From assembly GCA_964035545.1 (NCBI GenBank), contig OZ037765.1, positions 11,356,698-11,420,697 on the forward strand: 64,000 nucleotides of DNA, written 5' to 3'. Under the pieces are notes generated by a model, which made no database searches, had not been told where the DNA came from, and was given only the letters and a program-made list of their open reading frames with translations. Origin of the DNA: Bugula neritina (taxonomy: Eukaryota > Animalia > Bryozoa). Position 1 is the first letter of the stretch. Every line of letters starts with the position of its first letter. Of this stretch, positions 3,077 through 53,472 are shown one piece after another. The translations under genes and the position numbers were made by a program.

Positions 3077-16044
<12,968 letters not shown>

Positions 16045-23100: not shown

Positions 23101-26100
23101 AGGTGTGTATATTTACATAATGTGTAATGTTCACATACCTAGCTACGAAATTTAGTATAAATTAAAGAGATATTTGGTACTTTCTAGTTTTAAACAAAAT
23201 TATTTGATCATGCCTGAACATACAAAACAGAGATAATGGAGCAGAAATAAATATTTAATATAATCAAAAGCCAAGACACTGAGGTCTAAGGAAAATAATT
23301 ATGCAGTGCTCATCAATGGATTTAGATATTCAAATTTCAATCAATGTAATTATTCGTTTACCTTATTTTCCCATAATTTTTTCTAAACATAATTGCAGGA
23401 AGAAGATGCAAATGTAGCAAAAGACAGTAGATAAATATTCAAGAGATAGATATACAGCACAGTGAAACATGACAATATTTTGAGAAAGCTTCATTGAAAC
23501 GTTAACTAAATTATGCTCTAAGCATTTGATGAATGACAAGACTCTAGCGAAAAGCTCAGCATCATCCATGGATCATAAAAATGCATTGGATAACTAATAC
23601 GTACAAAACTACAGTGACATACAGCTTTTTACATTGCTACACTATTCTTCATTCCTTAATTTTATTTGCTTACTAATTCAATTCGCATTATGACGCATGT
23701 TGAACAAAGTTAACAAATAAGCTAGTGTAGAAGTGTGAGCATCTTCTTAGCAATGACATATACTGTTTAAATGAACAAACCTCTAGATGTTTCATCAGGA
23801 CCGCCACCACGACATTGACTAGAACGAATTGGGCAGTCAAAACGAAGACAACAAAGTAGATCGGAGTGACAACCTTGTTGACGCAGCAGTTTCGTATGCA
23901 GTCAATACTGTTATCACAGTTGGTTCTTAAAGCATCCTGTAAAATCAATACATATGTGTTTTATATGATCTCTACTTTACATAAAATATTTTTCACTGAA
24001 TTGAGAAAAATAAACAAGATTATATCAACAATTTTTAAAGAATAGATATTTAAAAATGTAGAGATCTTAGCATATTATGCTGTAAAAAGGAAAAGTTTAG
24101 CAGCACTATTATTTTTTTCAATGTAAATAACTTAAAAACTAAACTTTGCATGCCGTTTGCTCATCAGATGCTTATGGACATACAACCATAAGCTATTATG
24201 GTATTCTTACCTTCATGATGCCATTCCAATTATCACCAGTCGCAATTCTAAACAATGTAAGAAAGGCAGCTCCTGAGTTCTCAAAGTTTGCATGGACACC
24301 CATACCTTCACAGGGATTCTTGTTGGAGCATTCTACAAACGATTTGTATTATATGTTATGATATGTATTCTATGTTATGTATTATATGTTATGATATGTA
24401 TTATATGTTATGTATTATATGTTATGATATGTATTCTATGTTATAAGTATTATATGTTATGATGTGTATTCTATGTTATAAGTATTATATGTTATGTTAT
24501 GTATTCTATGTTATGATATGTATTCTATGTTATAAGTATTATATGTTATGATATATATTCTATGATACGATGTGTATTCTATGTTATGGCATCTATTCTA
24601 TGTTATGATAATATATATTCTAGGTTATGACATGTATTCTATGTTACAATATGTATTCTATGTTATGATATGTATTCTATGTTACAATATGTATTTTATG
24701 TTATGATATGTATTCTATGTTATAAGTATTCAATGTTATTGCATATATTCCATGTTATGATAATATTATATATTCTAGGTTATGATATGCATTCTATGTT
24801 AAAAAGTGAACAGTATAAAACAACAATAAGGAATTAAAATTATCAACAAAAAATCTATACACTCCTTGTTTATATTACATATTTGGACCTACTCGTATAC
24901 AAGTGTATAATAACTTAATTTTAAGCTCCAAAGGATAATTTTTTTGCATTCTAGTTTCAAAATATGAGTTTTACTGCATAGAGTTTTGTCTAAAAATGAA
25001 ACTATTTACTAACCTATTCGACCAAATAATTCCACACCGAGTGCAGCAAATATAAAGAAAAGCAGGAAGAAAAGAAGTCCCAGATTGGCAACTTGAGGCA
25101 GAGCCACCAGTACGGTGTCTAGCAATGCCCGGATTCCTTTGGCAACTTTCAGCAATTTGAGAACTAAAACAAATAATTAGTTTTATTTTTCATAAAATTT
25201 TGAAAAAATGTCTAATTCACGATATGAGCGTATATTATGAAAGTGATTCAATAAGTTCATAGTATATTTTATAAAATGCACAAAAGTGGAACTGGCAGTT
25301 TTTGCAATAAGCGAAATTGATTTTATGTAAAATATTTATGTTAATTTAAAGTGCTCTCATAGCTTAGCTTGGCTCGTGAAGGAAATACAGTTGATTTTTA
25401 AATATACCTCTCGCAATTCTTAGAATTCTCATCACTCTCATAATCGTTGGATTGATCGGAATGACATCATTTTGAACTTTTTCTAACACTATACCAACTA
25501 TTGATAGTATTATAATCAACATGTCTAGCTGATTCCACCTGTAAACAAATTAATTACTAGCAGTCAAAATAACAGTATCCTATCGCATTTAAGAGACCAG
25601 TATTTGATTACAACAGTTAATACAAAGTTTATTTAGTCTGAGACATCAGTGTACTTCCAAAGCAAAACAACTTGACATTGCTGCAAGTTGTATTATAAAA
25701 AAAATAAATATATACAATACTGCATAATATTTTTTTCTAACTTGAATGTTATGTAGAGACTGTAAAATGATGCAGGTGAAGTAGTTGTTTACGTACTATA
25801 TATTCTACTTCAACCTAACAGATCAACAATACTAACCTTTCTTTAATATATCGGACAAATCCGTAAGCAATGATCTTAAATGCAGCTTCGAGAATGAAAA
25901 TGAATGTGAAAACATAGTTCATGATATCTAAAGCAAATATCATCTCCTACAACAAAAAGTACAAGAAACTTGTTCATACTTCAAAAAAATATTTCAGCTC
26001 TCTATTGTAACACACATTTTATAAAACACATGTAACTTAAAAACTTAATGCTTATAACATTATAACATTATAAGTAAATGGGGTGCGCATGGCTGTGTAG

Positions 26101-29100
26101 TTCACAAACAAGAAATTGGATATCTACTTGGTAAGATAAATCTCCATGTTTCAACGTGCTAGATAAATATAATAACATTTTCAATAATTTATACAGCATG
26201 TTTAGTTTGAAGTACACTAGCCTAGGATAAAGTGAAAAGATACCTCCATTATTGTCTCACCTTGGACATGTTATGATGTTCCACCGCCATTGAAATTACA
26301 TTGCAGAATATTATTATGGACACAGCTATGTCGAAGAACTTATTGACAACAATGTGGTACACCCATTTCCTTGCCTTGCCGTATTTTGCATGATAAGGTT
26401 CTTGATTCAACTCTGCCAATAATAAGTTTTTGTTGTTAAGACTATCAACTACCATGAACCAGGTAGCCTGTTGACTACGATTGCCAAACCTTGGCCTAAT
26501 GGTGTAGAGCTATGGTGCCCAAACACAATAATTGTTGATCAACATATAAGATACCTTTTCAAATAAACTTTTTACCTCAAAACAAAATTAAGTTGCTTAG
26601 GCAAATTGCAAGTCTAATAAAGAGAACTGATAAAAACCAACAGCATCATAACTGTAAATTTATACTAACTCATAGCCAACTCTAAAAATAAGAAAAAATA
26701 AAAACTACCCTCTACGTGAGAGTGACATTTAGAGTAGAGTTTGCTGAATATTCCAATGTGGTTGAAAATCATAGAACTTTCAGATAAAACTACAAAATAA
26801 TCTATTAAAAAATTGGCACTTTAGCTTACCATCACTAGATGCAAAGGAGTCGTCTGCACAATAAAACACATGCATAGTATTACTGTGCTTTTCATTATTT
26901 GAGTAGGTACTATACCACTGAATTCACACTTTTGGTTATATTTTAATATATTAGACATTATGTTTAAAAAGGAATTAGTATAGTGAAATAGAAAGAAATA
27001 AATTTGAACAAAGAAAAAATGCAAGTGCATACAAAGCCAGCCAAGCTTAGTCTGTAGAAATTTACATCCTCGAAACAGAAAAGATAGAATTATAGAAGCA
27101 AATGATAGTGATTTCACTCAATACTAAATCATAATGATGTAGTTACACACCGTCAGCTTTTGACTTTTTCTTTTTAGCTGTATTGGCTCCTTTTATTTCC
27201 TCCTCAAATTTAGCTATTTCAGCGGCTGATTGTAGCATTATAGCAGTTACATTAAGCGCTGTGTAGAAATTAAATAAAGGAGTGGTTTACAACATACAAT
27301 CAATAAATAACAATAGAGTTGATTCCGTAAGAAATAATGAAATAAAACCTCATAGACCACTGCCACACTGGATATATTTCCTGGTGAGAAAATTTCTTAA
27401 TGCTGTTTTATAATCACTCTATAATTTTAGCCAATATTTCTGACTTAATTTCATTCTCAAAATCAGTTGACGTAAATATATAAATATTTTAGATAAAAAA
27501 TAAAGTATTGACGTGTCTTGGAGTTAACCAATGGTACAGTGTATTTGTTCTCAAATCACTAACGAATACCACTGCGGAGGTCTATTGTTGAGAGTTTTAC
27601 AACATATAAAGCCTGTTAACACACAGTGAGTGCTGCACAAACAACACTGTAGCTCAGATTCACAGAACATCCAAAAGACTGATTATTCACAATTAAAAAG
27701 TATTAATCAAATAAAGATTGCTCAATCAAAACATGCAGTTGTTAGCCAACTCTTTACTAAATTAAAACAAAAAAATTACAGTAGATTTAAACTGTAGATA
27801 TGTTGTTCTTTTTATATCATAGTTTTATAACTTCTATTTCCTAAAACATTTATGTATTTTAAAAACATTATTGAAAGATTTTCTCTCTGCACTGTAAGCT
27901 ATCAACTATCATTTCAACAACCTTCATAATAAAAATGAATTCAAGCAAAATTCAAACTTAGAATATGGTGATAATTACATTGCAGTACATAAGTTTGTAA
28001 TACCAATATTCTTAATACCTCCATTTCCACCTATTGAACTTTTGCATAAAAAACAACTATCAAAAGGCTGTGAAAGTTAAACTTTTTTGAGCGTTACAAA
28101 AAATAAGCTATTTTACAAACATATGCTTAAAAATAGACTCACTTGTTAATTTTTTCGTGAGTTTCTTTTGCCTTCTCTTCTCTCGTTTTTCTTTCTCTTC
28201 CTTTTCATGAGCCTCTCTGCAGCGATGGAAGTTCTCCACAACCACACCCACAAACATGTTGAGCACAAAGAAACCCACCAGCAACAGGAATGATATGAAA
28301 AACAGCAATCTCCATTCCTTGTAATTTTCAATAGGCTAAAATAACAGGTCATTCAAGTGTGTTAAATAATAAACATAGATACAAAAAAATGAGCAATAAA
28401 GTTGTTATCAAGTAATTAGGATATGTTGAGGGTTTTAGTTAAAAATGGCACAGGTAATACTGGCACAGGTAAAAATGGCACAGCTAAAAATGGCACAGCT
28501 AAAAATGGCGCATGTAATAATGGCACAGGTAATAATGGCCCAAATGGAAAAGTAGGTAAAAATGACACACTGATGTTAAATTTTCCCAAACTCACACCTT
28601 AAACTCAAACCCCCACCTCCAAACTTAAACCCCCATCTCCAAGCTTAAACCCCCACCACAAACGCAAGCACCCAACCCTCCCCCCGCCCCAATATTGAAA
28701 ATGTGACACTTTTACCTACTTCTTCATTTGTGCCATTATTACCTGTGCCATTATTACCTGTGCCATTATTACCTGTGCCATTATTACCTGTGCCATTATT
28801 ACTGTGTCATTTTACCTGGCACCATGTTGAGGATTAAGATTAAATGAAAAATATGATTTGATCTATTACTAAGTTTTACAATCTTAATTTCAATAAATTA
28901 AAAACAGCTTATAATTTTTGATGAATAAAAATTTTTTCTGTTAAAATATTTCATTTCTCAATACCAAAAGATAGATTTTTCTTAGTAGCAACTTATATTT
29001 AGTTATCAGACAGAAATCTAATAGGCCATAGTTAGGAAGCAAAAGACAATCAAAGCAAGTTTGTATTTCAAATTGTTAGAAATATTTGTGCTTATAGTTA

Positions 29101-32100
29101 ATAATGCAAAAACTAGCAATTTTGCTGACATGTGCACATGTCAAAAAAATTGCTTGGCATGTTAAAAGTATATTTTTCCATGGAAAAATATACTTTTAAC
29201 ATGCCAAGCAATTTTTCTACATTTTTTGTACTTAGAAATGATATATGACAAAAATAACTTATAGCATTTTAAACTACTGAAAATAACCAAAAGTACTATA
29301 TACATCATAAGGTACATACATACATGTATACCCTACTTACAGTACTTAAAAATATTATGCTAAAAATAATTCACCTGCAAATCTATTCCCACCGCATCTA
29401 AACCTTGATACATGATCATCACCCATCCATCTTTAGATGCCAAGACGAATAGTGATATTAAAGCATTCCCCAAGTTATCAAAGTTGTATCGGTGGTTTGT
29501 CCATTCATATCCTCTATCCAAACAGTCTGCTTTGGTCACTACCCCTTTCACATCTTCACCATCACAGTAATGGAATATTCCTCGGAAAAGCTAACCAATA
29601 AAGATATCTTAGAGTTTTAAATTTTATTACAACTACGGCATTTTTTAGCAAAATAACGATTGCATATATGTGTTACGTACAATAAGCTCTACCAAACCTC
29701 ACTGGCCTCAAATCAGTTTTCAAGAGGTGATTAAAAACAGCTTATTACTGTAATGCATTTTCTTTTACAAAAAAGTACAGAAAATGAGCAGGGAGAGAAC
29801 AGTTGTTAGCATGGCAATGTTTATAACATTCTCTCACCTGAACCCCAAGAATTCCAAAGATCAAGAAGAAAGTCAGGCAGATGAGAACAATGTTACCAAT
29901 TGGCCGTAGCGAAGAGAGCAGAGTTTCTACTACTAGCTTCAGTCCAGGAGCTCTGCTAATCACCCTGAAACACATGTTTGACTCAGTAAATAAGACACGT
30001 TTCTTAGACTTCAAAATTATTTGGTGTTCAGATGCAAATGCTTTTTAACAGTAAGCATTTATTTAAAGTTGCATCCAATAAACAGAGATAACATATCATG
30101 CATTATGTTTAAGATATATAGCACATCTCACTTTCAAATTAATTTTTAGCAATACAATAAATGCACTGTTGAAGTAAAATCCTAGCAGTTTATTTTTATG
30201 TGGTGTTGAATTTAGTAAACAGGGAGCAGCCGTGGTCTAGGGGTTAGAGCGTTTGCCTATTAAGCACGAAGTCATGGGTTCGAGCCCGGACAAAGGCCAT
30301 TGGTGATGTTAGGAAGAGCATCCAGTCATAATTGCTCTTGTGCCTCATCTCATTAAGTCCTTAGCCCGATTTAACAAAAACCCCCTTTTTCAGGGGTTTT
30401 CTCACAGGGATAGTGACTATAAACTTGTGTGATTTATTGAGTTTAGTAAATGTAGTACTGCTAGTTCACAGTATTTATTCAATTTAGTTTGTACAATAGA
30501 GCAGCATTCGTGAGTAGTGCGTCAGACTGTAACCCTAGTTATTATTAGACACCATTATCTCCACTTTATCATTCTTCTAAATATTTGCTTGCCATTAACT
30601 ATTGATAATTATTTCCTAATTTTGACATAAAATTGATTTGTGAACACAGCAAAAAATTTAAAAATGCCAAAAATTTTAATATTTTTGCCAAATTGAGATT
30701 TTTAATTTATTTTTTAGCAGGTGAAAAGTTGGTAGATCATGTTGAGTCCGAGAAGAGAGAGAAACTAACATTGCAAATAATACTTGAGAAACTAAAACTG
30801 CAGGTAATACCTGAGTGGACGGAGGGCTCTGAGTAATCTTAGCACTCGCAACACGCCAAATATCTTAGGACTCTCAGCGTTAGAGAATGTTATACTGGCA
30901 TCTATGACAGAGACGAGAACTAGAAATCCATCATTGATGTTCCAGCCATCTTTCAAGTACGTGTCTGCACCAATAATCAGTCCTTTAGCCGAGATCTGAA
31001 ATTATTCATTTCATACACTGAAATCTGAAATTGTACAATGACTTTGATAGAATTTTCAGATGAATTGAAAAACACATATACCTAACATTAAAGTTTGAGC
31101 ATTTTAAATAAATTAATGTCATTTTCTAGTTTAAGAACTTATTGTATGCAAAAAATAATGAAATTTAATTTCAAATACAAATAACAAAACTGTGCTTAAA
31201 TTATAAAACTCAAAATTTTGCCAAGACAAGGCTACAGCCAATCTATTGCCTATTTTTGAATTTGCATGCTTTTGAAATTGTAATAAAAACATTCAACTTT
31301 TACTTTAAGTTAGATTTCATTAAAATAGAAAGCCTTATTTTGTTACCAAGATAGTAGACATCAAGAAATTACATATTTTATAATGGATTACAAAAAATTG
31401 CTAAAAAATATTCTGGAACCTAAAATAATAATACTGAATAATCTGTAATATCAAACTTTTAAAAAATACACGAGTACCTGATGTTGAGCATCTATTCCAG
31501 TGATTTGGACAAATAATAACAAACCTTTATCAACATCTCCAGGAGAAATAGGAGAGTGAAAACGTAGTTGGCAATGGTTAGAACCTCTCGCTCCTACAAC
31601 ATTGAACAGGATTTTTAGTACATTTCTTAATACAAAAGTGCTAGTAATTTTAGTAAACATAATATGTATATAAAATGCTGTGCAACATATCTGTATTACA
31701 TAAACCAATTGTAATGCTTACTCATACCATTTTGTTCAAGATCTGATCACTAGAAAGCTATTAAATAAAAAAACTCAAATAGGCAAGAGTAATTTTGCTC
31801 AATGATTACAGCGCACACACAGTTGGTAACGGCAAAATGAGATAGAAATTTTGTGCATTGTCATCAGCAAAATCAACTCAACAGTTTTGTATTTTTCAAC
31901 AAAATATACTTACTACACTATCTTGAGGTATACTTGGTCTCTCAACAGCAAGCCCTATGCAGTTCAGACCAATCAACACGAGTATGCAATAGTCAAACCA
32001 TTTTCTAGATGACAGCCATTTACAGAATCTTCTATAACGGTTATTAGGAGATAATACATATAATGAGTAGTTTTCCCTCGTTTGTAGACATCCTCTTGGT

Positions 32101-35100
32101 CTGCATGCATGTCCTAGTTTCTACAATTTACATTTTCAATTAAATTCCATGGCAGAATGCAAACTTATATATTTTGGATGCTTACAAAATTTTGTATGCC
32201 TAAAGTCACTGATATTAAATATCACCGAGATCAGAAATCTTCATTAAGTAAAGTTTGAAAAACGATTTTATAGATCAAATGTAGAAACCAAAAGGCTTCA
32301 ATTTGAAGATGAAGTAACTCTATTCAAATTTATTGCGACGGTAGACTTCTATTACTTAGATATAAGGATACCTACAACAAATTTCACATTACAATTTACC
32401 TGGAAAAATGATCGGTCTTTACTTTGACACGTTTCATCGGTTTTAGTATCTGATTTTTGCTGGTCCGAATACGGGAATTGTTTTTCCTTGTCATTAACTA
32501 AACGCATTAAAAATACAGGTTAAAACTTTTTAAATAATAGTAAACGTAATAGTCACAGGCTTAGAAGTACAACACTAATTTTATTTAGTTTTTTTGTTAA
32601 ATGATGTTAATAAGATTGGGTTGGCAATATAACTACCTTCTAAATAGCTAGCAAAGCCCATAACACTATTACAATTTAATAAACATTTTGTAACACTAAA
32701 AGACAAGTTTTATTAAACCTACCATTTACACAGTTGTACAATGAGCCATTGCTGATTTTTGACTGATGTTTCTTTGAGTCACAAGCCAATTCCTCATTCT
32801 CTCTTATATCTATGCTAGAAGTTGAAAATGTTTGAATTTTGTCTTTTGGTCGTTGTATAGTTAGTAATGGCGAGCTTTCACCATGTTTTTGAGAGTTGCC
32901 ATTCATTTGGACAAAAGGAGGGTGGAGCATTGCATTACCATTGCAGTTTTTATTAACCTCAGGTAGAGAAATAGGTTCAGGTATCTGGACAGATAACTGA
33001 GTCCATGACTTATGTTTCGGTTCTTCTAGCTGATCGTTTAACGAGCTACAGACTTGACTTTCGGTGGTGATGGGCACTTCTGGCAGCGATGATGTCATTG
33101 GCTGTCTCCCAGGTACTTGCAGCAAATCAAAATTTTTAATTGAACCATTTCTACTTCTACTGTCAGCACTGCTTATCGTCAGCCTGCACAGATCAGTTGT
33201 GTCTACTTCGTCATCTGAGGAGGACAACTCCATTAAACTAACTTTATCTTCCGACTTTGGTTTTCGACTGCTACTACTATTCTTTCTAACAAATCTTGGT
33301 GAGCTGCTGTTAGAATGTCTATTGCCTGGTGACATGTTTTTCCCATTCTAAAAAAAATGCAAGCAAAATATCATGCAAAAATTTAAAAAAAAGTTAGCGG
33401 TTGACAGATGAGTAAATAAGTAAACATTCCACTTAATATAAAACGTTATTAAATTTACACAAATAAATTAAATTATAACTTTTTAAAACATTAGAATTAC
33501 CTCTATACTGAGATTGTCTTGTTCATGCATCGATTGAAAATGAGATGACAAAATAACCTCAGATTTAGGAGAGCCTCTAGGGGTGGCTGCGGTATGTGTT
33601 ATTATAGGTGGCATCTTTAGCTTAAGCTCTTTGCTATGAACATCTGCGTGGTCTGTGATTATAGATGGGAGAATTCCTCCAGTTTCTAGATTATTGAAAA
33701 AATAAAACAAAGAGTAATAAATTACTAGCACTAGCTTTTGATTTGTCAAAGTCACTGCAGTGCAATAGCTGGGAAGCCAATCATAACTTATTTTAACAAT
33801 AAACGCCAATGGCGGTGGCTTTATAGATTATTGATTATTGGAGTAGCTTAGAACTTACATCGCTATTTTTTATTTTCAATTCATATCATAGCTAACTGTT
33901 CATTACTAATCAATGGGTTACACAGTTAGCTAGTCAATGAAGTATGATAAATCAAAGTTTTTTGTTATTGAGAAATTTCATTTCTTTCTCTTACAGTTCA
34001 GATAATACACAATGCTTATTCCAACTCCTGCCCCTTCAATTCCAATTTCCATATACAAAGTTGTGTAGACTCTCTCTATGCATTGAGGCTAGATAGCTTT
34101 GCAGTTGCTTCATGCATAACAATGTAGAGAATGTATGTCCATATTAATGCTAGTTTATCCAACAACCCAAGATTCAAGGAAAAGTCAAATAAGCAAGCTT
34201 ATTGGAGCCGGTATTATACTTAGTATTATTTTTAATAATATTAATATTATCATTATTACTTAGGCTACTAACAAATTGCAACAAATAGAGCACAACTCTT
34301 CAACTACCGCAATATGACGCTGAGCCAGGTCTACTAGATCAGCAGTGACATTGAGACAGTGTAGTTCCTTTATCAAACAAGAGCTGTTAGTAAATGCGAG
34401 AGAGAGAACTCTCTGTTAATCGACAGAGAAAGTCACCTTACCTGTTACAACAGGCTTCTCTGTCGGCTCATCTCCTGTTTTCTCTATTTTAGCATTGACA
34501 GTTTTAGCAGCTAAGTGAGCAGTTTGGCCTCTCTAAAAGAATAATTTAAGGAAAAATAATGCAAAATTAAACAAAGCAGATAAGAAAAACAATATTAAAT
34601 GTCATGTTTTAATAAAAATAAAACAAAATAACTCACTGTTTGGTAAAAATTTTTTAAAGAAAACTGGTGATAAGCAAATAATTTGTTATAAAGCTTTATA
34701 ACTTGCAAAGCTAACCCTACTTTAATTATTCTATAATAAGTTTTCCAGCAAAAGCAGCAAAGTGGCGAAATAATAATCAATAAGCAAAAATCTTTCACTC
34801 GATTCAAACCTGATACAGGAACTTGTTTATACTCTTAAAAAAAAGGTATTCAAAAATGTATTTTACAAACGTAATATTATAATAATAAATAATATTATTA
34901 AAACAGCAATTTTAATGTGGGTTAGCAGTATAAAGTTTGCCAGTTAATATTACATTCAATGCTGCATACATTAGCAACTAGCAGAAGTTACTCAGAAAGT
35001 AGAAAGCGTTGAAAAACAGTTTTCTATATGAACATTCAAAGCCTTGCATATGAAGCCACATACATACAAGCAGGAGAAGGTATGAAGAATAGCAGAAGCA

Positions 35101-38100
35101 AAGGAATTGGTACAACAGGACAGGTCTTCAAAGATGTTTGCAATTTTCAGAACAGAAAGCTCTTGGATCATCACAGTTTTTCAATGGCCATAGTTAGCAT
35201 AGTCTAACTACATGCATCGTTATGAGTACACTTACATCACGGTCAATGTATACAGATTTGTGTGCTGCATCAGCACGTAACAGTATTGAACAACTACAGG
35301 TATAAGATTTGCCACATATTTGGCATGGACCCTCCAGCTGCAAAGATTATAAATAATGGAAATGAATTAGTGGGGGAGGTATTTAGTAGGTGACTGTTAT
35401 ACAACACTGGGGTTTATGAATTTTAGGGTTGCTAGCAGGAAAACCAAAAAATATTCTTGAATTTTAATAAATGCTCTATTATGATGTAGAAATCAGTTAA
35501 CACAAGAACTTCAAGTAGCATGCAAAATCATTCCAAATCAAATTAGATGCTCAATTAATAATAAACTATGTAAACCAGCAACACTATGAGCAAATGCTGT
35601 GCAATTAAAACTACACTTAATATGCTAAGATTTAACATTAAACTTCAAAAGTAATGAAATAAATAAATTTTATGGAATGATTTTTTTCAATTACTATATT
35701 AGCATAAGTGGCTATAAGCAATATTAAAGTTCAGTTAAAGTTTATTATTGATCATAAAATAGATTTTACTTGAAAGAAATGGATATTTTCAACTGATAGC
35801 AAAGAAGTTTGATTTTAATTTTTCAACAATTGTTATTAATGTTTAGATTATCCTAATGTTAGAGGCTATATTGGTATCATCTATTTTAGTGCTGAAAATT
35901 GCAAATGAAATACAACTTTGTTTCAATACAAATAGATTGCTAAAACCTAAAAAAATTCTTTTTATTAATGTCACAATTGGAACTTTGCTTTAAAAATGAT
36001 GGAAGTAGAAAAAAGGGTTAGTCGGGTGAAAACTGGTAATGAGCAAGGTTTTTTATAACCAACAAAGTTTAAATTGTAGCGACTTGAGGCATATAATATG
36101 AAGGAGAAAAAAGAGAAATACATAAAGAGGCACATAAAGGTGCCTGGGTATATTTGAGGGTATATAAGAATACCTGAAGATGCGTGTAAGTGAGGGTACA
36201 TGAGAATATTTAAAGGTATTTAATGCTTATGTATGAGTTTGTGGTTAAAATCTAGAGAAATGTTACATGGAATATGTTACTTTAGAGCATGATATGTAAA
36301 ATGCCAGTTCTAGCAATATACCATCTACCCAATAGAATGCATTCACCGGTCAAGTAAGTTTTGGTTAGTGTTAGAGCACCAGCTTATCAAAGTTGAGTCT
36401 TCAATAAACTGAAAGCAGCATTACTTACATCCTTACTCATTTTTTCAACTCGTTTTCGAAGAAAATTGTTTAATTTCTTTTTTGACTAAAACATGATTGT
36501 AGAACAAACCAAATTAAATAACAATATTGCTGATGAAAGCATATTATAATATACACTAAACATAGACAATTTAATATGATGGAGTTACGAACAACATGAG
36601 GTAATATTGACTTGGAAGTGTATTAATAGCAGCTTAGAAATGGCGGAACTGGTAAATAATACATACCACCGATGAAAAACCTTCTACTAGTATAGCCACT
36701 AGCAAGTTAAAAAGCACATAATTTCCAATAGTCATAAGTGCAACAAAGTACAGAGCTGCCCAAGGAGATGTCTTAGCCATTCCATCATACATAATAATAT
36801 TCCAATCTTCTTGTGTCAATATCTGAGACAAAAAGAAAAAAATTAGTATTATAATATTATGGTTAATGACCTGAAATATTTGAGCCAATAATAGATTTAA
36901 TTTACAAAAGAAATAAAAAATGAACCACTGTTTGATATATTAGTTGAATGATTTACAAACAGATAAATCGAAGAATAATATTGTTATTTTGTATATTGGT
37001 ATCTAACAAACTAATGAAAAAGCTGTTAACCTACTGAAAAAAAAAGTTTACAAAAATTAAAATACACAAATATGTTTAAAAATGCTGGAGCACAAAGTAT
37101 TTGTTCTTGTCATATAGTAACAGAGCACATCTTGAAGAAAAGTGAAACCAATTAATGAGCATGTTTTAATAAGCTTACCCAACACCAGATATCTACAGCT
37201 CCTAATGTTTTTACTCAACATTAAAATGATGTAACACTTTTACTTATATGCCTATATTTTTCATGTAATTCATAAAATTCATCTAGTTAAGATGCTATTA
37301 TAATCAGAAACCTGAAATACTGTGATGAGAGACCAAAGAAGAGAGTCAAAGTTTCTTCTGCTACAATACGTTGTCCCATCTTCTTGCTCCTCACAGAAAA
37401 GACAGCCAAAAAGATTCATACCAAGTACACTGTAAAACCCATGTAAGTTAGTAAAACTATGTCATATATAGAATACATAACATATTTTAGAAATTGTATA
37501 TTAAAGACACACATGTATTTCAATCTTTTAATTTTAGTAAAAGAGTGTGCATAAAGCGTATTCATATGTTGTTCACTGTAGGACTTTGTGTCTGTGACTA
37601 AGTGTATGAATGACTGTGACTGAATGTATGAATAACTGTGACTGAGTGTATATATGACTGTGACTGAGTGTATAAGTGACTGTGACTGAGTGTATAAATG
37701 ACTGTGAATAAATATCGAGATCTCAATCAAAAACCCTGATATACAAACCTGAAAATGAACATGAAGAGTATGAGAAGGCCAAAGAATGACGCCACATTGT
37801 CCAGAGTTCTAACCATCACAATGAATTGTTGCTGGAGAGCTGGCAAAAACCGGATAAGTTTAAGAATTCTTAGAAGACGGAACGTTCGTAAGACGGATAA
37901 ACCACTGTTTTCTCCCATACCGATTTCCACAAAACTGTAAATAAAAATGAAAATAGGTCTTCAATTAAAACTAAATAGAATTAAACCTAGTAAAAAGGAA
38001 AATGTTGAACATATAAAAGCCTCTAACAGATATAGTACTAGTAGAAGCCACTGACCTTAAAATGACAATAATTCCATCAAATACATTGAAAATATCTTTA

Positions 38101-41100
38101 ATGTACTGTAGACCTCCTTCTGCCACCAGTTTGAAGACCATTTCTATGGTGAATATCCCAATAAACAAGTAATTGCTTTTCTCAACAATTTCTGTCAGTA
38201 TGTCAGGCTGTAAGTTTATATAAATAATAACTGCACTCAAAAATATAGATAGAAGCCATATATAGCATTTAATAACAAATTAAGCTTACTATTCAAATAA
38301 ACTTTTAGATGCTCTAAATAATGATTAAGTAGTAAATAATTTAATAAAAAAACATCCTTCTTCACATTTTGCATTCTATTATGTTTAAAATAATGTGTTG
38401 CTCTTTTAACTTGATGTTTTCACAATACAATGAAGTTTGTTAAAGTTAATTAAGTCATCAATAAACTATAGATATAAAAAGCAAGCATATAGTTTCAATT
38501 ATTTTTTTATTTGTGTCAAATTTATTAACGGTGATTTTTTGCACTATCATTGCCTTCATATGAATAGCTTAACTTCCTTCTTTGCAAATAATTCATAATT
38601 AACTCTTATATCACTATTTCATTAATGTTTAAAGTACAGAGCAATACTCTATTCATTAGAATTTTGCCGCAAGCAAGCTGGTCTACTTCAATCTTGAATA
38701 ACATTAGTTAAATATATTAGATTTTTCCTGCAAGCCAATTTCAGCTTTGATAAAATCAATTGATTGTAATTACAACATGCAGCCATCATTAAACATTAAA
38801 TTTTTGAGCTCATTTATGGAGGCTGCAGGCAATAAAATATTGAACGCAACTTTTATCAAAACATGCATACAGAAAAATAAACTTCGTATAATTTAGAAGA
38901 ACTTATTGAGCCCTTTCGCAATTGAAAAACGCAAAACTTTTCTGAATAAATTGGAAAGTAATTCATTTTAATTTAACAAAACTATGTCCAGTTTGAAGTA
39001 AACAAGATGTATAAATGTTATAAAACTAAACAGCGAAGATGGAAGCAAATGATGCTCTGCATTAATGATACAGTTCAGTTGAATTTAGCATTTTATATGA
39101 TTTGTTGTTGAAAACATCATGAAGTGGCTATATAATAGAGTTTGCACAAACATTGGACATAATTGAATATTGGCAGCACAAGAAGTTGTCTACCCTAAAG
39201 CTGAAGGCTAATAATTGAGAACTCGAGCAAAACAGACGAGTTTACCTGCAAATGGTTTATTAGAAGGTTTTATTCGCTATGTAAAAATATTCAGTACCAG
39301 AAAATGCATTCTTTTTTAGATGCTAGATTATAAGTTGTGCTTTTTTCTAGAAATTCTCTGTTTGAGACCACTCACTCAGAAGGTTTCACTACATAATACT
39401 CAATATTCAATAACATTGCATCTGTTTTTTTTGTACTAAAAAGTTATTTAAAATGCATGTATTAGACACTTGGCCATTTATTCTTCACTTGTGAAATAGG
39501 CCTGTTTACTGGAGTATATACAATTCAATAAACTAACATGCAAAGTAATATATTGAAGCATTTTTTTTAAATAATAAATCTCTAATAATAAACCTATAAG
39601 CTTATAAATTAAAATTCTATAAACCTGATTGTGATGCTCTACTCCCATCATGACTGTGTTAACCAAGATAGCTATCATGATGAAGTTCCGGAAAGCTCTG
39701 CTATTCACTATAACCTGCATACGACTCCTCATTTTTGACAATTTTTCTACAAAAAGAGCAATTGGTCAGTAACCATTTAAGTATGCGATGCTTCTTTCAT
39801 TTTTGTCGCCATTATTTTCAGCTAAATCTACACACCACCAGTATAAACGCTGTAGTCCTATAGCAGCAGGTATTTGTGTGCATTCCTCATCAATTATTTA
39901 TTGTATCACCCACAACGTGTAAAACAAATATACTAAATTATTGCAGTTGAATTAAAAATGGCAACTTAACAAGTCCACCTACATAGAAGAAAACATGAAA
40001 ATCAGTCAAACATATATTTAAAGTATGTGGCTAATAATCTATCTTAAAAGCAACTAGCAAAGAGTTTCACACTTTTCAGCTTTCAGCATAGCAAAATGAG
40101 GTAAGTCATATATGCATACAGTTTTTGCAGTTGCTCACAATAAACTATGTGAAATACATCTGTAATTCTAAAGCCAATGTTGTGTTGGGTAAATGATTTC
40201 AATGATGAATAGAACATCTCATAGCATATGAATAGTGCTTCACTTGACTGTATGGTGTTTACTCCATTATATTGATGCATAAAATTACTTAATCTAAAGG
40301 AAATTAAGCCGTCCTTCAATGTCCGATGATAATAGGATGAGCTGAATGATGCCAACAGCACAGTAAACAGGTATTGATCAGCTAAGACTGCAAAGCGACA
40401 GTAAAATAATGCTGACTCAGTCTGCTGAATCTAATCTAAAATTCAGCGGATCTTCAGTACACAGTTACTAGTCAGTGTAGAAGGCTTACACTGCGTCTGG
40501 GTTCGGCATTCTCTACTGTCATTAATCATTTTGCAGCCAATTTCTAGGTTAAAAAATGCCATTAGCTATGATTTAGAAGCAATTTATTTTCAAAGTGAAT
40601 TCAATTTACTAGGTCAATGAAATGAAAAAGTCTTCATCAAAGTATGCCCAAAGGTTATTTCTGATTTAAATTTATTATCGTCCTACGCGCAAATGTTTGT
40701 TTCTCTGATTCTGCAGACGCTTGAACACCATTTGATATAAATTTCCTGTTGACAGGCAATAAATATTTCTCCACTACTATAAGTCTATAACCAATCTACT
40801 GTTTATTACCAACATTATAACTTAAGTAACAAATTTACAATCTTTCACTTTAAAAGAACTTGGGGGGGGGGAAGAGGTGGGACAACGATTATAATACAGC
40901 TGTTTAAAATTGAAAAACAAGTATGAACCAATCATTTACTTTCCCTGGCAGGGCACTTCTACACTTGATACTGTGTTACAAACTTTTAGTAGTTGATAGA
41001 CCTGAATAATACCTATGAGCTAAATTTGAGCACAAAATCTCAGGAAAAGATACCATTACTGTGGCATAGCAAAGCTCCAATGATATAATGGTTATATGAC

Positions 41101-44100
41101 AAGCAAAAAAATTTCAGGCCTACATATTCACCATTCTCAAAGACATTAATCGCGGAGAAAAAATTTAACAGTGCAAAAAACCATGTAAAAGTAAAAAATA
41201 ACTAAATTTAAATTTAGTTTAGAGCACTGTCGAAGTTTATACACACAACAGTTACGGTAATCGCATACACACAGTAAAACTTTTACTTTTAAGAGTTGCC
41301 TTTTCTTTCACACAAAAACTACCTCAAAACAGCCTACGCTTTGCTATCAATACTGTAAAGGGCAAATAAATCTACAAATAAATAATACTCTCTTTCATAA
41401 CATGGAGATTGACCACAGGGGTTGTAGCGAGATGTGAGCTTGAAGTTAACCATAACCAAACCATACACCGAGTTACAGAGAAGATTCCAGATGATATCAG
41501 CCATTACATACCCAGTATTGAGCCCATAGCAATATATCAGGATTAGCAAAAGCCATTTTAAAAGCTTTATTACATTCGCAGCAACAAGTAATACATAATT
41601 GCAGCCTCCCATAAAGTTTAATGAGTATATTCAGATTGATATGTATGAAATCAAGCAAGTAACTAGCATAATATTGCTAGGATAGAAAGGATAGCATCTT
41701 TACCAAAGGACATGTAGAATATTTGCTAAAAGTTAAATTACCATTTTCTGGATTTTCTACAACAATGTTATAAAAAATTAGTGTAGATTTGACACAAATT
41801 GCAAGCGCAGAGAAGAAATTTAGTACAAAATTACTGTCATACTTAGAAAGTTAGAAATTTTCATTTTGAGGTTATAGATTTAGTTTTCTAAACTTAAAAA
41901 ACTATAACACCAAGTTAATCTGTAGTTTAGCTAAATAGTTATTTAAATTCATCAGTTGAACCAAAGGTCTAGAAAATCACTTTCCGGCAGATTGTCTCTT
42001 ATTAAACAATCTGCAGAAAGGTTCTGATAATTAATAACATTTTATTTATTTACTGATTCACAAAATTAAATTTTATTTTAGCATGCAAAAACCAACCTCT
42101 GGCAATGCCAAATCTGCTCACGGCCTTCGTCTTGTCTTCAGCTTTCTTTTTCTGATTCTCCACACACAAATGCTGACACTCGGGGCAACATAGACCACAA
42201 ATGTTTTGCAAGTAACTAAACTGTGAAAAGCTTGATCTCTGCTTTTCAGCTGAAAAAGAAACAAACTATTCTTAATAAATGGCAGTATTTTCTTGATCTA
42301 TTTTCAGGGTGTGGCTTAGAGAGTGCTGAAATAGAAAATAAGAAACAATACAATGCTGATAGTGGCAATCAAACCCACTCAGCTAAAATTGAAAACTACT
42401 TAGCAAAATTTATTTATTATACAGACTTGAGTTCCATTTTTACATTAGCATTATGATTATTATTAAATACAGAAATGGCATGATTATTCTCCAACACATA
42501 TGTGGTCTGAACTCAAGGACATAATGGTATATATTAGAATATTATGAATGAAAAGCCAGTTTTCTACTCAAACAGTGTTTTATCAATAAAAACAATTTCA
42601 GTCTGTCTTTGACCTCAAACATTTTTTCCATTAAACAGAACATTGAATTGAGTAGTAACTATCATTAACAATATAATTTGTGGTTTTAACATACATTTTA
42701 TAAATAAAATTTATACATTATAGTTAAAAAGTATAAAATTTGCATGATGATACTGACTGCATTTACTAAAGTAGTAGTTACTATGACACTTGAAAAACTT
42801 GCGTTTGTATCATTACAGCTCTTTTGGAACTTTGTACTACTTTGCTCATTGGGTACAAGAAACATACTCGCAATGACAATTGAGTTAGTAGTACACCAAG
42901 AGCAAAATGTACAAGAATTTGATTTCCATCTTTAGACATTTGCTCAAGCATGCAATAACACAGACTAATAATTTTATTTAGATTATTGCTGATAAAAATA
43001 ATCGTGACTTACGTAATGATGGTTTAAAATGGTTAACTCCATTACTAATCATTCCACCGGATAATGCATAGCTGTGAGAACGAGGTGCACTAGTATAAGA
43101 GCTGCGTGATTGGATAGAATGAACACTTCCCATATCACCTGGTACTCTTAGTCTATTTGAGAGAGTAGGTGAAGGAAAACCTAGACTACCATGAGGTACC
43201 ATCAGGTGATTGCCTTGACTTGATGACCTGCAAATAAAATATTTACTTTTCTAATAAACGAGAAAGATATTTGTTTTTGAGTTAATATTTGAAAACCAAA
43301 TTTTAATTCAAAAATTGTGAAATGCATTTAGTAGGTAATTCTTTTAAGGAGATGAAATCAGAAGCGCCAATATCTGGTATTACTGAAATCTGGACTTTAG
43401 AGTTTATAAATAAATCCTGTATCTATACTCTAGCTACTCTCTCATTTTTGAAATTTGATAAATGTTTCAAAAGCAATTACCTACATGGGCCAAGTTTAAG
43501 ATTTATTTAAATTCAGGTATTGGAAGGCTTATCATTTATTCAACTTCTGCGATTACTCAGCCATCAAAATGTGTCACAGCTAATTGGCTATCATTTAGTA
43601 TAGGCTACACAGTTTAAATGTACATTGTACCAATTGGATCTAGCAGTTGCATGCCTTATAAACTTGAAAAAAAGTTTAATGGGCTAGTATATTCCAATAG
43701 TTTATTCTGACATTTGCTTCACACTAAAGTTAGTTAAACTTACATTGTTTATAAAATAAAACTAAAAGGAAAATTTCACTGCCTGCAGTGAGCAAGCCAA
43801 GAGAATAGAACAACAGTTACAGCAACAAGCTGCAGAAAAAAAGTCTGCAGTGAAGATTTGAGTTTTTTCATCGTGGCTTTAAAATGAGGGCCGTTGAATT
43901 TACTTTTGACATGGATCCAATTTTCAAAAAGGCTAGGATTTTTGCCTGATGGAAACATTTATACTATACATGCAAAATACAGTATAAAACTAGCCATTGA
44001 TCATGAATAGCTAACGCCTGAGATCAAAAACATTGCTATCACAAATATATATCAACAAATCTCGAAATGTCTATACCCAACATGCTGGCACCATCAACAT

Positions 44101-47100
44101 ATGATATGAAAGAGAAAACGCAAATATCTGCCAGGCTAGTAAAGGTACTTCCTAGTAGACTTCATGAAATTCATAGCATTGCTGATTCCACAAGAACATA
44201 AGCTATAAATATTCATGAACAGGTAATTCTGAATACAATTAATAGATATACTGACAGCTGATTATGTAGAGAAATTGGAGAACACTTGCCTAAAGAGAGG
44301 AGGATGACTGTCTGTGAGTGATTTGTGTTCACACAGACTTTGGGGAGAGTGCAGAGCTGGTTTCACTTGTCTATATGAGAGTTGAGGAGACGAGAGTGGT
44401 GAAGGATACACGGAGGGCGGTCTACTTCCACTAGTAATGCTATGAGATGACAGACTTGCTCTCTGAGGCAGCACATGCAACAACGCTGCATTCTCTGGCC
44501 CTTCATTGGCATCAACAATTACCTGGCAAAAAATTTAATGATTTCAACATATTCTAAACCCCAGGTATCTATTGTTTAACAAATCTGCTGTTCAAACAGC
44601 TAGTTTATATTTTTTCAGCAAAATATAGAAGATTTACTCATTTGTATTACATACATTTATTCCACCATTTTTCACGCTGTTTGAGTTAGCAGGAATGGCA
44701 CTGGAGTTGAATGAAGTTTCATCTTGTTCAGAAGAAACTAAGATTACAGGATCTAAACTAATGGGGCTTGTTTTGCTACTTCTTCTAAAAAACCTGGGAC
44801 TGGCATTCATTTGCTTTGTAAGTCCAAAATATGATATGGTATCTATGTCACTGGGTTCTGGCGAGGCAATCGGCGCTGTCGTCGTATTCTCCATTAAAGC
44901 AGTCACGTGATAGCATGGTCTACAATGGACGTGGTCTGAAAAGACGTTAAGTTTTATATCAGTAGATGCGTTTTCGTCAGCTTCCGGTGGATTTGGATTA
45001 CGTTTATTTAACCAATTCCTGTAAGACCGCTTAATCTTTCTTCCTGTTTTTCTGCATAAATATATTACATATTTCAGCATTTGGTTGTAACATCCATCGT
45101 TTTCTGTTTTAGTGCTGGTAAGCGTAGTGGAAGACTTGTAACGTTTTCGCTCTTCTGCTATTTTCTCCGTTTCTCGGCGCTTAGTTTCGGAGAACTGAGT
45201 GGCAATGACCACCAGGAATAAGTTAACCATAAAGAATGAGCCAATCTGTGCAAAAAATAGATAAAACAGATTTTAATTCTGCCCTGGCATCAAAAATTGT
45301 GGATAGCATACCATCATTTTTATGCCTCAAGGGCCACCAGACAATATGGAAATGGTAGTTAACCTCAACCTTTCCAGTCAGTTTTGGCAATCACTAATAA
45401 GTAATTGAATGCATCAAATACAATACCATTAGAAATTATTTATGCATGGTATTTCAGTGTCCTGAAGCACAGTCTAGCACTATACGAGTGACATGACCTT
45501 AAACTAACTGGGAATTGAGTTGATGATGTCATAGATTCACCAGTATCACCAGAAATGATTCTTTGTCCTGACTTAGATAAATTTCTATAGTAATTCAAAG
45601 ATAACTAGACTGCCAAATATACTTCATGAAATTAGTTAATATAACCAACAAGAAACTGTATCAAAAGATTAAAGTCAAAACTATATTTAGCTTTTTATGC
45701 TCTAACTGGTTTACAAATGTACTGCTACAATTATGATTTAAAATTAATTATAATAGAAACCTCTGTTTTACACCCAGGTTTTTGTCGAACATTAAGCTAC
45801 AAATAAAATCAAAGTGAAATTAAATGTGCAAAAGTAGGAGTCTTATATTTATTGGGTAGTACTGTTGTTATACATAAATATAAAATAATTTCTATATTTG
45901 AAAAGTAATCCAGGTTATCAATAATGCTACATACACAGATATAATACACATCTTTAAAGAAAACTCACTCACGCAAGTTTATAGTCGCTATCTCTGTGAG
46001 AAACCCCTGGTGTAAAGGGGTTTTTTTTGTTAAAGCAGGCTAAAAATTTATTTAAATGAAGCACAGGAGCAATTATGACTGGATGCTCTTCCTAACATCA
46101 CCAATGGCCTTTGTCCAGACTCGGATCAATGACCTCGTGTTTACTAGGCAAACGCTCTAACCCCTACAGAGTCTAGACCAACCCAATTTCCATCTCCTCT
46201 CCCTAGTCTTTACTATCTCTTTCAAAATGATAATTTCGCAATCATATTGTACTTACCACTATTAGAGCTAGGAAGTAGACCCACACCCAGAAGGAATGCA
46301 CATCTTGAATATAGTACATGATATCCACCCATCCTTCCATACTAATTACCTACAAGAGCAATGACTGGAGATGACAACAGAGGCCATGATATTCTTTGAC
46401 CACCTGTATCTATATTAAAAGTCTACAATCACTTTTTAGTAAAATCTACTTCTTCTTTTGTGGTATCAATCGGGGACTATCATTTAAAATACAACCTAAG
46501 ATTTTGTTAATGTCTATATTATTGTAGAAAAGTTCCAAAGATCAATTCTGTAAAGTTAAAACTAATGGGCACTTTGAAAGATCCACTCTTCGTTGAGTAC
46601 TTTCAACATCTTATACAAACAAAGTGCTATCAGAAAGTTGTGTTAATTGAGCTCTTTAGAATAAGTAATGAAACAATGAACTGTTATGATGTCTAGACTA
46701 TATAGAGTAAAGATAGCTTCAGCCAACAGCAATAATGTTATTTCACCTCATTGCTTATATAAAATTATCATATAATAGCATCATTAACCATATTCAAATT
46801 CAAGTTTGCAATAGGAAGTAGTAGACAAGTAATACCTGGAATATTGCTATCCAAGCACTCGCTATGTTATCAAAAGAAATAGCCTCCTGGAAGGGGTTAG
46901 GCCCTTCAGGTTTGCACTCCGTATAGTACTGATTGATGTTTATACAACTTCCGTTTTCTTTAGGTAGATAGTCAGGATCTAATAGTTCTGGGGAGAATGG
47001 CTCGGTGCAAGGGATTTCATTCTCAAGAGTAGGTTCTATTGCATCACATGACAACATACCATTGTTTTCAGGACCAGAACAAATGAACTCTAAGCTAGAC

Positions 47101-53025: not shown

Positions 53026-53472
53026 TACTCCACTGGTGCCAGGTACAGAAATGGAGTTGAAGCTAATGCCAAGTCCATTAACAACTTTGATCTGCAAAAG
53101 TATGCATGAATTTTCAGCAACTAAATTTTAAAATTTAAAGGTACAATAGTCAGAATTAAATATTTCTCAATCACTACGTTCCCATGCTTTAAATGGATGA
53201 GATTTTTGTGGAATTATCGAGTTAGGGTAACCTATAGTGGTGGTTTCATTCCATTGACGCTATCCCTAGGATCAAATGAATTAGAGTGAACTAGTTGCAA
53301 AAGACCCAACAGCTCAGATAATTATTTTATTTCTGCATCAAAACAGGAAGTCACATCTTGACAAAATTGTTTTAAATGAATTGCAGTTTAAACTTTCATT
53401 ACAATTAGATATAATACAAACCCTCAATTACTGCAACTTGGTAGAGACCCATTTAAAACAGTATCATACTAC

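What the first reader, a model, noticed from the sequence alone, without database searches (positions are those of the whole stretch)
36823..37748. Only the sodium-permissive 12a-type turret exon is present: a T-type channel possibly hard-wired as a Na+ channel
Seen: between IIS5 and the TQEDW exon there is one 39-aa exon with CxxC...C. The flanking introns (319 and 489 nt) contain no second S(I/V)LGM..NFDS..FQ exon. Established: protostome Cav3 genes (Lymnaea, Drosophila, C. elegans) typically carry mutually exclusive 12a (short, tri-Cys, highly Na+-permeable) and 12b (longer, penta-Cys, more Ca2+-selective) with an unchanged EEDD filter. Inference: 12b was lost, or the splice choice was resolved by gene duplication with a 12b paralogue elsewhere, making this gene a constitutive low-threshold Na+-passing channel.
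Basis: partly seen in the sequence, partly recalled or inferred. Interest (0 to 1): 0.8.

Follow-up and report, generated by a model that had tools for sequence, protein, structure and literature searches.

The report
Bryozoan T-type channel, single 12a turret
The only T-type calcium-channel gene of this bryozoan carries just the short 'sodium-permissive' version of one pore-loop exon, a state already reported in a leech and a nematode, and the single residue shown in snails to confer sodium permeability is arginine here instead of lysine, so whether the channel prefers sodium is still untested.

Summary
Observation confirmed. On the minus strand, a single-copy Cav3 (EEDD) gene has one 118-nt, 39-aa domain II turret exon (37429..37312; CxxC-9-C). 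Its flanking introns are exactly 319 and 489 nt.

No 12b-type exon exists in those introns, in the window or in the 216-Mb assembly. No second Cav3 gene exists. The same procedure did find 12a+12b pairs in control contigs. Two diverged relatives share the single-exon layout, so the loss is lineage-wide.

The genome length matches the published Bugula neritina assembly (216.00 Mb), so the host is very probably this bryozoan, a protostome.

Interpretation only partly supported:
- '12b lost' fits. 'Resolved by a paralogue' is rejected.
- 12a-only protostome Cav3 genes are already published (Helobdella, Brugia).
- In Lymnaea, Na+ permeability of 12a depends on one lysine (K1067), and K1067A behaves like 12b. 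That site is Arg here, Arg in one relative and Asn in another, but Lys in 71 of 72 other 12a-type turrets.
- The other requirements of the model (tri-Cys loop, four-Cys domain IV loop) are met.

So 'hard-wired Na+ channel' is plausible (about 0.4) but not shown.

No RNA evidence could be obtained. Exons were never joined for a search or fold. The scan had not reported this gene before.

Verdict: new member of a known kind.

The parts
23691..53030 (-). Cav3 (T-type) four-domain channel gene; approximate extent of the recognised coding exons, with C-terminal exons probably continuing to about 20150
   Evidence: Stop-free exon stretches for all four domains. Filter residues are MEGW (46337), QEDW (36816), KDGW (29431) and GDNW (24240), giving EEDD. 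The best homologues are named voltage-dependent T-type calcium channel.
37749..37934 (-). IIS4-S5 exon (..[61 protein letters not shown] + AG of the split Ser codon)
   Evidence: Single copy in the genome.
37430..37748 (-). Intron 1, 319 nt, GT..AG; holds no coding-like turret exon
37592..37707 (.). 22-nt tandem repeat, 5.3 copies, inside intron 1
37312..37429 (-). Sole domain II turret exon, 12a type: 118 nt, 39 aa, [14 protein letters not shown], with Arg (AGA) at the position of Lymnaea Lys1067 in CSRRNFD
   Evidence: It differs from relative L015 at 16 synonymous and 5 non-synonymous codons.
36823..37311 (-). Intron 2, 489 nt, GT..AG; this is where 12b lies in species that have it, and no 12b-like sequence is present
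   Evidence: The 12a-then-12b order is seen in Lymnaea P0003 and in L048/L049.
36670..36822 (-). Domain II pore helix, selectivity filter and IIS6 exon ([21 protein letters not shown]); the Asp of QED is the proposed partner of the turret Lys/Arg
23691..23960 (-). Domain IV L6 loop and IVS6 exon with four Cys (C..C..CC), the invertebrate-type L6IV loop
   Evidence: compared with Lymnaea, tick, nemertean and sea urchin (4 Cys) and a vertebrate (2 Cys).
51299..51559 (-). IS1-S2 exon with three loop cysteines ([15 protein letters not shown]), including the presumed disulfide partner of the turret

Best explanation
This is the single Cav3 (T-type, EEDD) gene of a cheilostome bryozoan, very probably Bugula neritina. 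Its domain II S5-P1 turret is encoded by one obligatory exon of the 12a type. The alternative 12b exon found in most protostomes is absent from this lineage, most simply by secondary loss, and no paralogue replaces it, so every channel molecule carries the same turret. Shown here: the gene structure, the absence of 12b and of a paralogue, the 12a scaffold (39 aa, CxxC-9-C), the four-Cys domain IV loop, and purifying selection on the exon. Inferred: how it conducts. In the published snail model, a positive residue at the loop apex salt-bridges the Asp next to the domain II filter Glu and lets Na+ dominate. Here that residue is Arg rather than the almost universal Lys. Arg has been kept across two diverged species, so a positive charge probably still reaches the Asp. 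I lean towards a Na+-permissive channel (about 0.4 that Na+ carries most of the inward current). A mixed, Ca2+-leaning channel is nearly as likely. The sequence cannot decide between them.
For: Exon and intron boundaries. Only one turret exon in the window. No 12b exon in the genome with a Lymnaea query (an arthropod 12b query returned no candidates at all and is uninformative). The method finds 12a and 12b in control contigs. Each Cav3 exon hits only its own locus in the 216-Mb assembly. The weaker hits are HVA Cav, NALCN-like and Nav genes. Relatives with the same single-exon layout: L013 (623-nt intron 2) and L015 (both introns complete). 12a classification. Register of the Lys site fixed by Lymnaea P0003 (12a CDRKNFD, 12b CDRANFD) and by K1067/D1087 in PMC9694082. 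Lys-site census (71 Lys and 1 Arg among 72 12a-type turrets). Arg codons AGA and CGT, and 16 synonymous against 5 non-synonymous codon differences. Four-Cys L6IV loop and three-Cys IS1-S2 loop. Host identity: 216,009,554 bases against the published 216.00 Mb.
Against: Arg at this site has never been tested in any Cav3. A relative has Asn at the site; by analogy with K1067A that predicts Ca2+ preference, and it shows the charge is not indispensable in this clade. Lys at the same site coexists with Ca2+-preferring currents in vertebrates; sea-urchin turrets in my sample also carry Lys, and echinoderm T-type currents are reported as mainly Ca2+-carried in starfish eggs. Many 12b exons also carry Lys there. 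The animal has a Nav1-type gene, so it has no obvious need for a surrogate Na+ channel. 'Secondary loss' assumes a single origin of 12b at the base of the protostomes, which I did not test.
Confidence: 0.75

Rival explanations
1. One reading: because only the 12a turret exists, the channel is a constitutive, predominantly Na+-passing low-threshold channel.
For: The 12a scaffold has the same length and Cys spacing as Na+-permeant 12a exons. A positive charge is kept at the switch site and conserved as Arg in two species. The four-Cys L6IV loop that the snail model also requires is present.
Against: The tested determinant is Lys, not Arg. A relative has Asn. The Lys-bearing turrets of vertebrates give mainly Ca2+ currents, as is reported for echinoderm (starfish-egg) T-type currents, while sea-urchin turrets in my sample carry the same Lys. 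The animal would then have no Ca2+-conducting T-type isoform at all. A Nav1-type gene is present.
Confidence: 0.4
2. After 12b was lost, the remaining 12a-scaffold exon was re-tuned towards Ca2+ preference. The switch residue drifted away from Lys (to Arg or Asn), and the Lys inside CxxC was replaced by Leu.
For: This clade is the only 12a-type group in the sample without Lys at the site (0 of 3 against 71 of 72). It is also the only one with Leu in CxFC. Asn in L013 is neutral, like the K1067A mutant that behaves as 12b.
Against: Arg is conserved between the window and L015 through synonymous codon change, which suggests selection for a positive charge. The turret net charge of -2 lies within the range of other 12a loops.
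Confidence: 0.3
3. The lineage never had 12b: the single short tri-Cys exon is the retained ancestral state, and 12b arose elsewhere, or more than once, in protostomes.
For: Tri-Cys single exons occur in the annotated products of sea urchins and a nemertean. Single-exon intervals are common in raw animal contigs (7 with 12a only, 6 with 12b only). No remnant of 12b is detectable in three species.
Against: The literature reports 12a/12b pairs in flatworms, nematodes, arthropods, molluscs and annelids. Those groups bracket bryozoans within protostomes, so never having had 12b would need several independent origins.
Confidence: 0.15
4. A 12b exon or a 12b-bearing paralogue exists but was missed, because of an assembly gap, extreme divergence or a location elsewhere.
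For: Only one assembly was searched. The arthropod 12b query returned no candidates at all, which by itself says nothing.
Against: The window has no N and both introns are fully read. The Lymnaea 12b query did detect the turret exon through its shared flanks and found nothing else. Three independent assemblies of three species agree. The positive controls worked.
Confidence: 0.03

Closest known systems
Lymnaea stagnalis LCav3 exon 12a isoform (Senatore et al. 2014; Guan et al. 2022, PMC9694082)
   Same: Same position between the IIS5 exon and the pore-helix exon. Same 39-aa length, same CxxC...C scaffold and same NFDSLLW..TVFQ descending helix. EEDD filter and four-Cys L6IV loop.
   Different: The snail has Lys (CDRKNFD) where this gene has Arg (CSRRNFD). 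The snail has CKFC where this gene has CLFC. The snail gene also carries the mutually exclusive 12b, which this gene lacks. The snail isoform's Na+ permeability is measured; this channel's is not.
12a-only protostome Cav3 genes reported for Helobdella (leech) and Brugia (nematode) (PMC4436565)
   Same: A protostome Cav3 with only the short tri-Cys exon 12 and no 12b.
   Different: A different phylum (Bryozoa), for which I found no paper on Cav3. I did not examine the residue at the lysine site in those two species.
LCav3-12a K1067A mutant (PMC9694082)
   Same: A 12a scaffold without Lys at the apex. It is the nearest experimental analogue of the relative that has Asn.
   Different: The mutant has Ala. 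The window has Arg, which keeps the charge, so the mutant's Ca2+-selective phenotype cannot simply be transferred.
Single-exon Cav3 turrets of echinoderms and vertebrates
   Same: One constitutive exon 12 of about 39-40 aa with a positive residue at the same site. Echinoderms also have three Cys.
   Different: They have Lys, not Arg. Their T-type currents are reported as mainly Ca2+-carried (PMC5379919). Vertebrates have one Cys in the turret and a two-Cys L6IV loop.

Membership tests
[quoted passage not shown] | Four homologous domains with an EEDD selectivity filter | tested here: met
   MEGW, QEDW, KDGW and GDNW at 46337, 36816, 29431 and 24240. Exons for all four domains are present.
[quoted passage not shown] | Closest homologues are Cav3 channels, not Cav1/2, Nav or NALCN | tested here: met
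   The top hits of the pore exon include products named T-type alpha-1G/H/I-like. The genome's HVA Cav exons read ILTGEDW and are at most 49% identical.
[quoted passage not shown] | Gating-brake helix-loop-helix in the I-II linker; low-voltage activation | not tested
   The I-II linker exon (44637-45272) was seen but not analysed. The electrophysiology cannot be tested with these tools.
Exon 12a-type domain II turret | Length 38-46 aa, lying between the IIS5 exon and the pore-helix exon | tested here: met
   39 aa at 37429..37312. The definition comes from PMC7382465.
Exon 12a-type domain II turret | Tri-cysteine pattern CxxC...C | tested here: met
   CLFC-9 aa-C. The exon scores 82.8 bits against a 12a profile and 48.2 bits against a 12b profile.
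Exon 12a-type domain II turret | Lys at the loop apex, 20 residues before the filter-adjacent Asp (K1067 in LCav3-12a), the tested Na+ determinant | tested here: not met
   Arg (AGA) is at that position, Arg (CGT) in L015 and Asn (AAC) in L013. 71 of 72 other 12a-type turrets have Lys.
Exon 12a-type domain II turret | A mutually exclusive 12b partner (48-55 aa, five Cys) in the same gene | tested here: not met
   There is none in the introns, the window or the genome, and none in two relatives. The controls were positive.
Na+-permeant invertebrate Cav3 (functional class) | Invertebrate-type L6IV loop with four Cys (two disulfides) | tested here: met
   [21 protein letters not shown] has four Cys, as in Lymnaea, tick, nemertean and sea urchin. 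The requirement comes from PMC9694082.
Na+-permeant invertebrate Cav3 (functional class) | Na+ carries most of the inward current (about a 15-fold increase when Na+ replaces NMDG+) | not testable with these tools
   This needs heterologous expression and patch clamp.
12a-only protostome Cav3 genes (Helobdella, Brugia) | Protostome host, single Cav3 gene, only the 12a-type exon | tested here: met
   The host is a bryozoan by genome-size match and by earlier notes. Single gene. Single exon.

The most novel reading that the evidence does not exclude
In bryozoans, which lost the 12a/12b splice switch, the Na+/Ca2+ preference of the sole T-type channel is set by point substitution at the switch residue itself: Arg in Bugula and one relative, Asn in another. 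Related species would then differ in T-type ion selectivity without any splicing. That would be a natural mutagenesis series at the Lys1067 position and the first test of whether Arg can replace Lys in neutralising the filter-adjacent Asp.
Probability: 0.25. Interest if true: 0.55.

Novelty: new member of a known kind. Interest (0 to 1): 0.33.

Why it matters
The result extends the known set of protostomes with a single exon 12 to a new phylum. It shows the state is lineage-wide, not an assembly accident. Its main value is as a caution and as a test case: exon type alone does not predict ion selectivity. This clade is the only 12a-type group in my sample in which the experimentally defined switch residue is not lysine. 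Expressing the Arg and Asn forms would directly test the lysine-aspartate salt-bridge model of Na+ permeation in T-type channels. It does not open a new kind of mechanism.

Tried and rejected
2. Spliced model. I never joined exons for any search or fold, so I made no structural model of the Arg-Asp contact.
3. Second Cav3 candidate at G000:C3:3614434 (46% identical to the domain III turret). It is a Nav1-type gene with CGEWIE and TYKGWIE.
4. A 60-aa open frame with five Cys in intron 2 (37060-37239). It has no LGM..NFD..FQ pattern and no tblastn support. The introns are not conserved in the relatives.
5. Turret net charge as a distinguishing feature. The value of -2 lies inside the range for 12a loops, -3 to +6.
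6. An arthropod 12b query against the genome returned no candidates, which is uninformative by itself.
The 77-aa query found 53 metagenome loci, but none was a close relative.
8. Literature searches for the source runs of the relatives and for bryozoan Cav3 found nothing. The relatives L013 and L015 remain taxonomically unnamed.

Full report
THE OBSERVATION. The finding's interval (36823-37748) lies inside a gene on the minus strand. Read in that orientation, the order of features is as follows. The IIS4-S5 exon ends at 37749 with the first two bases of a split Ser codon. Intron 1 follows (37748..37430, 319 nt, GT..AG). The turret exon is 118 nt (37429..37312) and encodes (S)[39 protein letters not shown]. 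Intron 2 follows (37311..36823, 489 nt, GT..AG). The pore exon starts at 36822 with ILTQEDW. The gene runs from about 53,000 down to at least 23,700. Its filter reads MEGW / QEDW / KDGW / GDNW, which is EEDD. Because 118 is not a multiple of three, the exon cannot be skipped without a frameshift.

IS THERE A HIDDEN 12b? I extracted 40 turret peptides of both types from homologues found with the neighbouring pore exon. I ran a deliberately permissive tblastn against the whole window. The only hit is the known exon (E 5e-19, 72.5% identical to a tick 12a), and everything inside the two introns has E > 1. Intron 1 is partly a 22-nt tandem repeat. Genome-wide, the Lymnaea 12b peptide finds only this same exon, through the shared flanking residues. 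An arthropod 12b finds nothing. The method does work on raw genomic DNA. In 53 metagenome-derived animal contigs it recovered 12a and 12b exons, including two contigs (L048, L049) with 12a followed by 12b.

IS THERE A PARALOGUE? The turret exon, the domain II pore exon, the IIS4-S5 exon, the domain I turret exon and the domain III pore exon each hit only their own locus strongly in the 216-Mb assembly. The weaker hits are ILTGEDW exons of high-voltage Cav genes, a NALCN-like gene and Nav genes. The best of them (C3:3614434) is a Nav1-type gene with Lys in domain III. 'Splice choice resolved by duplication' is therefore rejected for this genome.

HOST. Earlier notes of this scan name Bugula neritina. 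That was a lead only. The assembly length of 216,009,554 bases matches the published Darwin Tree of Life assembly of 216.00 Mb with 9 chromosomes (PMC11480708), and my hits fell on contigs C1-C8. I take the host to be this cheilostome bryozoan, a lophotrochozoan protostome. I did not verify this with a marker gene.

RELATIVES. Two independent sets of public contigs carry clear orthologues.
- L015/L016/L017 (GC 40%) have the IIS4-S5 exon, a ~260-nt intron, one turret exon ([40 protein letters not shown]), a ~440-nt intron and then the pore exon.
- L013/L014 (GC 38%) have one turret exon (..CLFCGEVDGKKDCNRNNFD.., one residue shorter), a 623-nt intron and then the pore exon. Only 140 nt lie upstream of the turret exon.
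Neither set has a second turret exon. The exons are about 75% identical to the window's in DNA, and the introns do not align. These are diverged species, and the single-exon layout is a property of the lineage. Between the window and L015 the exon differs at 16 synonymous and 5 non-synonymous codons, all five within the variable loop. That indicates purifying selection. The species behind these contigs could not be named.

WHAT KIND OF EXON IS IT? By the published definition (12a: 38-46 aa, CxxC...C; 12b: 48-55 aa, five Cys; PMC7382465) it is 12a. Profiles built from 58 12a-type and 12 12b-type turrets score it at 82.8 and 48.2 bits respectively.

DOES 12a MEAN SODIUM? This is where the interpretation weakens.
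- Guan et al. 2022 (PMC9694082) showed that in Lymnaea the Na+ phenotype of 12a rests on one lysine, K1067, predicted to salt-bridge the Asp that follows the domain II filter Glu (D1087).
- K1067A behaves like 12b (2.2-fold against 15.6-fold Na+ effect), and A-to-K in 12b does the reverse.
- The Lymnaea genome product P0003 (CAL1528277.1) carries both exons in tandem and fixes the register: 12a reads CDRKNFD and 12b reads CDRANFD, with the site 20 residues before the Asp.
- In the window that position is the second Arg of CSRRNFD. L015 also has Arg and L013 has Asn.
- In my sample, 71 of 72 12a-type turrets have Lys, and the one exception is the window's own relative. All 61 one-Cys vertebrate turrets have Lys. 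The 12b turrets have Ala, Lys, Met or Thr. All further 12a and 12b exons in the metagenome contigs have Lys.
- The two Arg codons (AGA, CGT) differ only by synonymous steps, so Arg is old and maintained.
- The other two ingredients of the model, the extra disulfide of the tri-Cys loop and the four-Cys L6 loop of domain IV, are present.

WEIGHING. For a Na+-permissive channel: the correct scaffold, a conserved positive charge at the switch site and the correct domain IV loop. Against: Arg is untested. A relative tolerates Asn. Lys at the same site coexists with mainly Ca2+ currents in vertebrates, and echinoderm T-type currents are also reported as mainly Ca2+-carried (starfish eggs; PMC5379919). 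Many 12b exons also have Lys. The animal has a Nav1-type gene. I put 'Na+ carries most of the current' at about 0.4 and 'a re-tuned, Ca2+-leaning channel' at about 0.3.

NOVELTY. The 2015 review by the same laboratory states that a few protostomes have only 12a (Brugia, Helobdella) or only 12b (Capitella) (PMC4436565). Among raw animal contigs with a complete IIS4-to-pore interval, I found 7 with only 12a and 6 with only 12b. A 12a-only Cav3 is therefore a known state, and the bryozoan is a new member. I found no paper on bryozoan Cav3. The unusual part is the replacement of the otherwise almost invariant lysine.

LIMITS.
- The spliced protein was never assembled. All searches were done exon by exon by reference, and no fold of the joined domain was attempted, so the Arg-Asp contact was not modelled.
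- The relatives are unnamed.
- Secondary loss, as opposed to primitive absence, rests on the published distribution of 12b, not on a test made here.

Noticed in passing
window 37592-37707: A 22-nt tandem repeat (consensus CTGTGACTGAGTGTATAAATGA, 5.3 copies, 89% matches) makes up about a third of intron 1. It is not conserved in the relatives.
   Followed up: partly
window 3499-7200, minus strand: A CaMKII-like kinase gene lies just downstream of the Cav3 gene on the same strand (exons such as ..[57 protein letters not shown]..). Another note of this scan (s1-478717) flags a duplicated exon there.
   Followed up: no
G000:C3:3604434-3620900 (L011, L012): A Nav1-type sodium channel gene with Glu in the domain II filter (CGEWIE) and Lys in the domain III filter (TYKGWIE). 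A second Nav-like domain I exon (LITLDFWE) lies at C2:1660955. The animal therefore has conventional Nav genes alongside its single Cav3.
   Followed up: partly
L019, L055 against L029, L031, L034, L043, L066 (JGI metagenome contigs): In one group of metagenome contigs, loci with only a 12a exon (CWRKNFD; pore [17 protein letters not shown]) and loci with only a 12b exon (C[NS]RKNFD; pore ILTQEDWQEVLYNGMSMTS) have different pore exons. That looks like two paralogous Cav3 genes, which is the 'splice choice resolved by duplication' scenario in some unidentified animal.
   Followed up: partly
P0003 (Lymnaea CAL1528277.1), P0184 (Mytilus), P0188 (Magallana), P0194 (Saccostrea), P0195 (Elysia), P0167 (Oedothorax), P0011 (Pectinophora): Public gene models include both the 12a and the 12b exon in one product, in tandem or with intervening residues. 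These are annotation errors for a mutually exclusive pair, though they are convenient for fixing the order as 12a then 12b.
   Followed up: partly
P0008, P0132, P0214 and the 12b exons in L025, L027, L029, L039, L048, L049: Many 12b-type (five-Cys) turrets, in insects and in unidentified metagenome animals, carry Lys at the 'switch' site (CDRKHFN, C[NSE]RKNFD). The rule 'neutral residue in 12b' described for molluscs and nematodes is therefore not general.
   Followed up: partly
window 37419-37421 and relatives (CLFC): The residue between the first two turret cysteines is Leu in the window and both relatives. It is Lys in 48 and Arg in 5 of 57 unique 12a-type loops. This is a second clade-specific loss of a positive charge in the turret.
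   Followed up: partly
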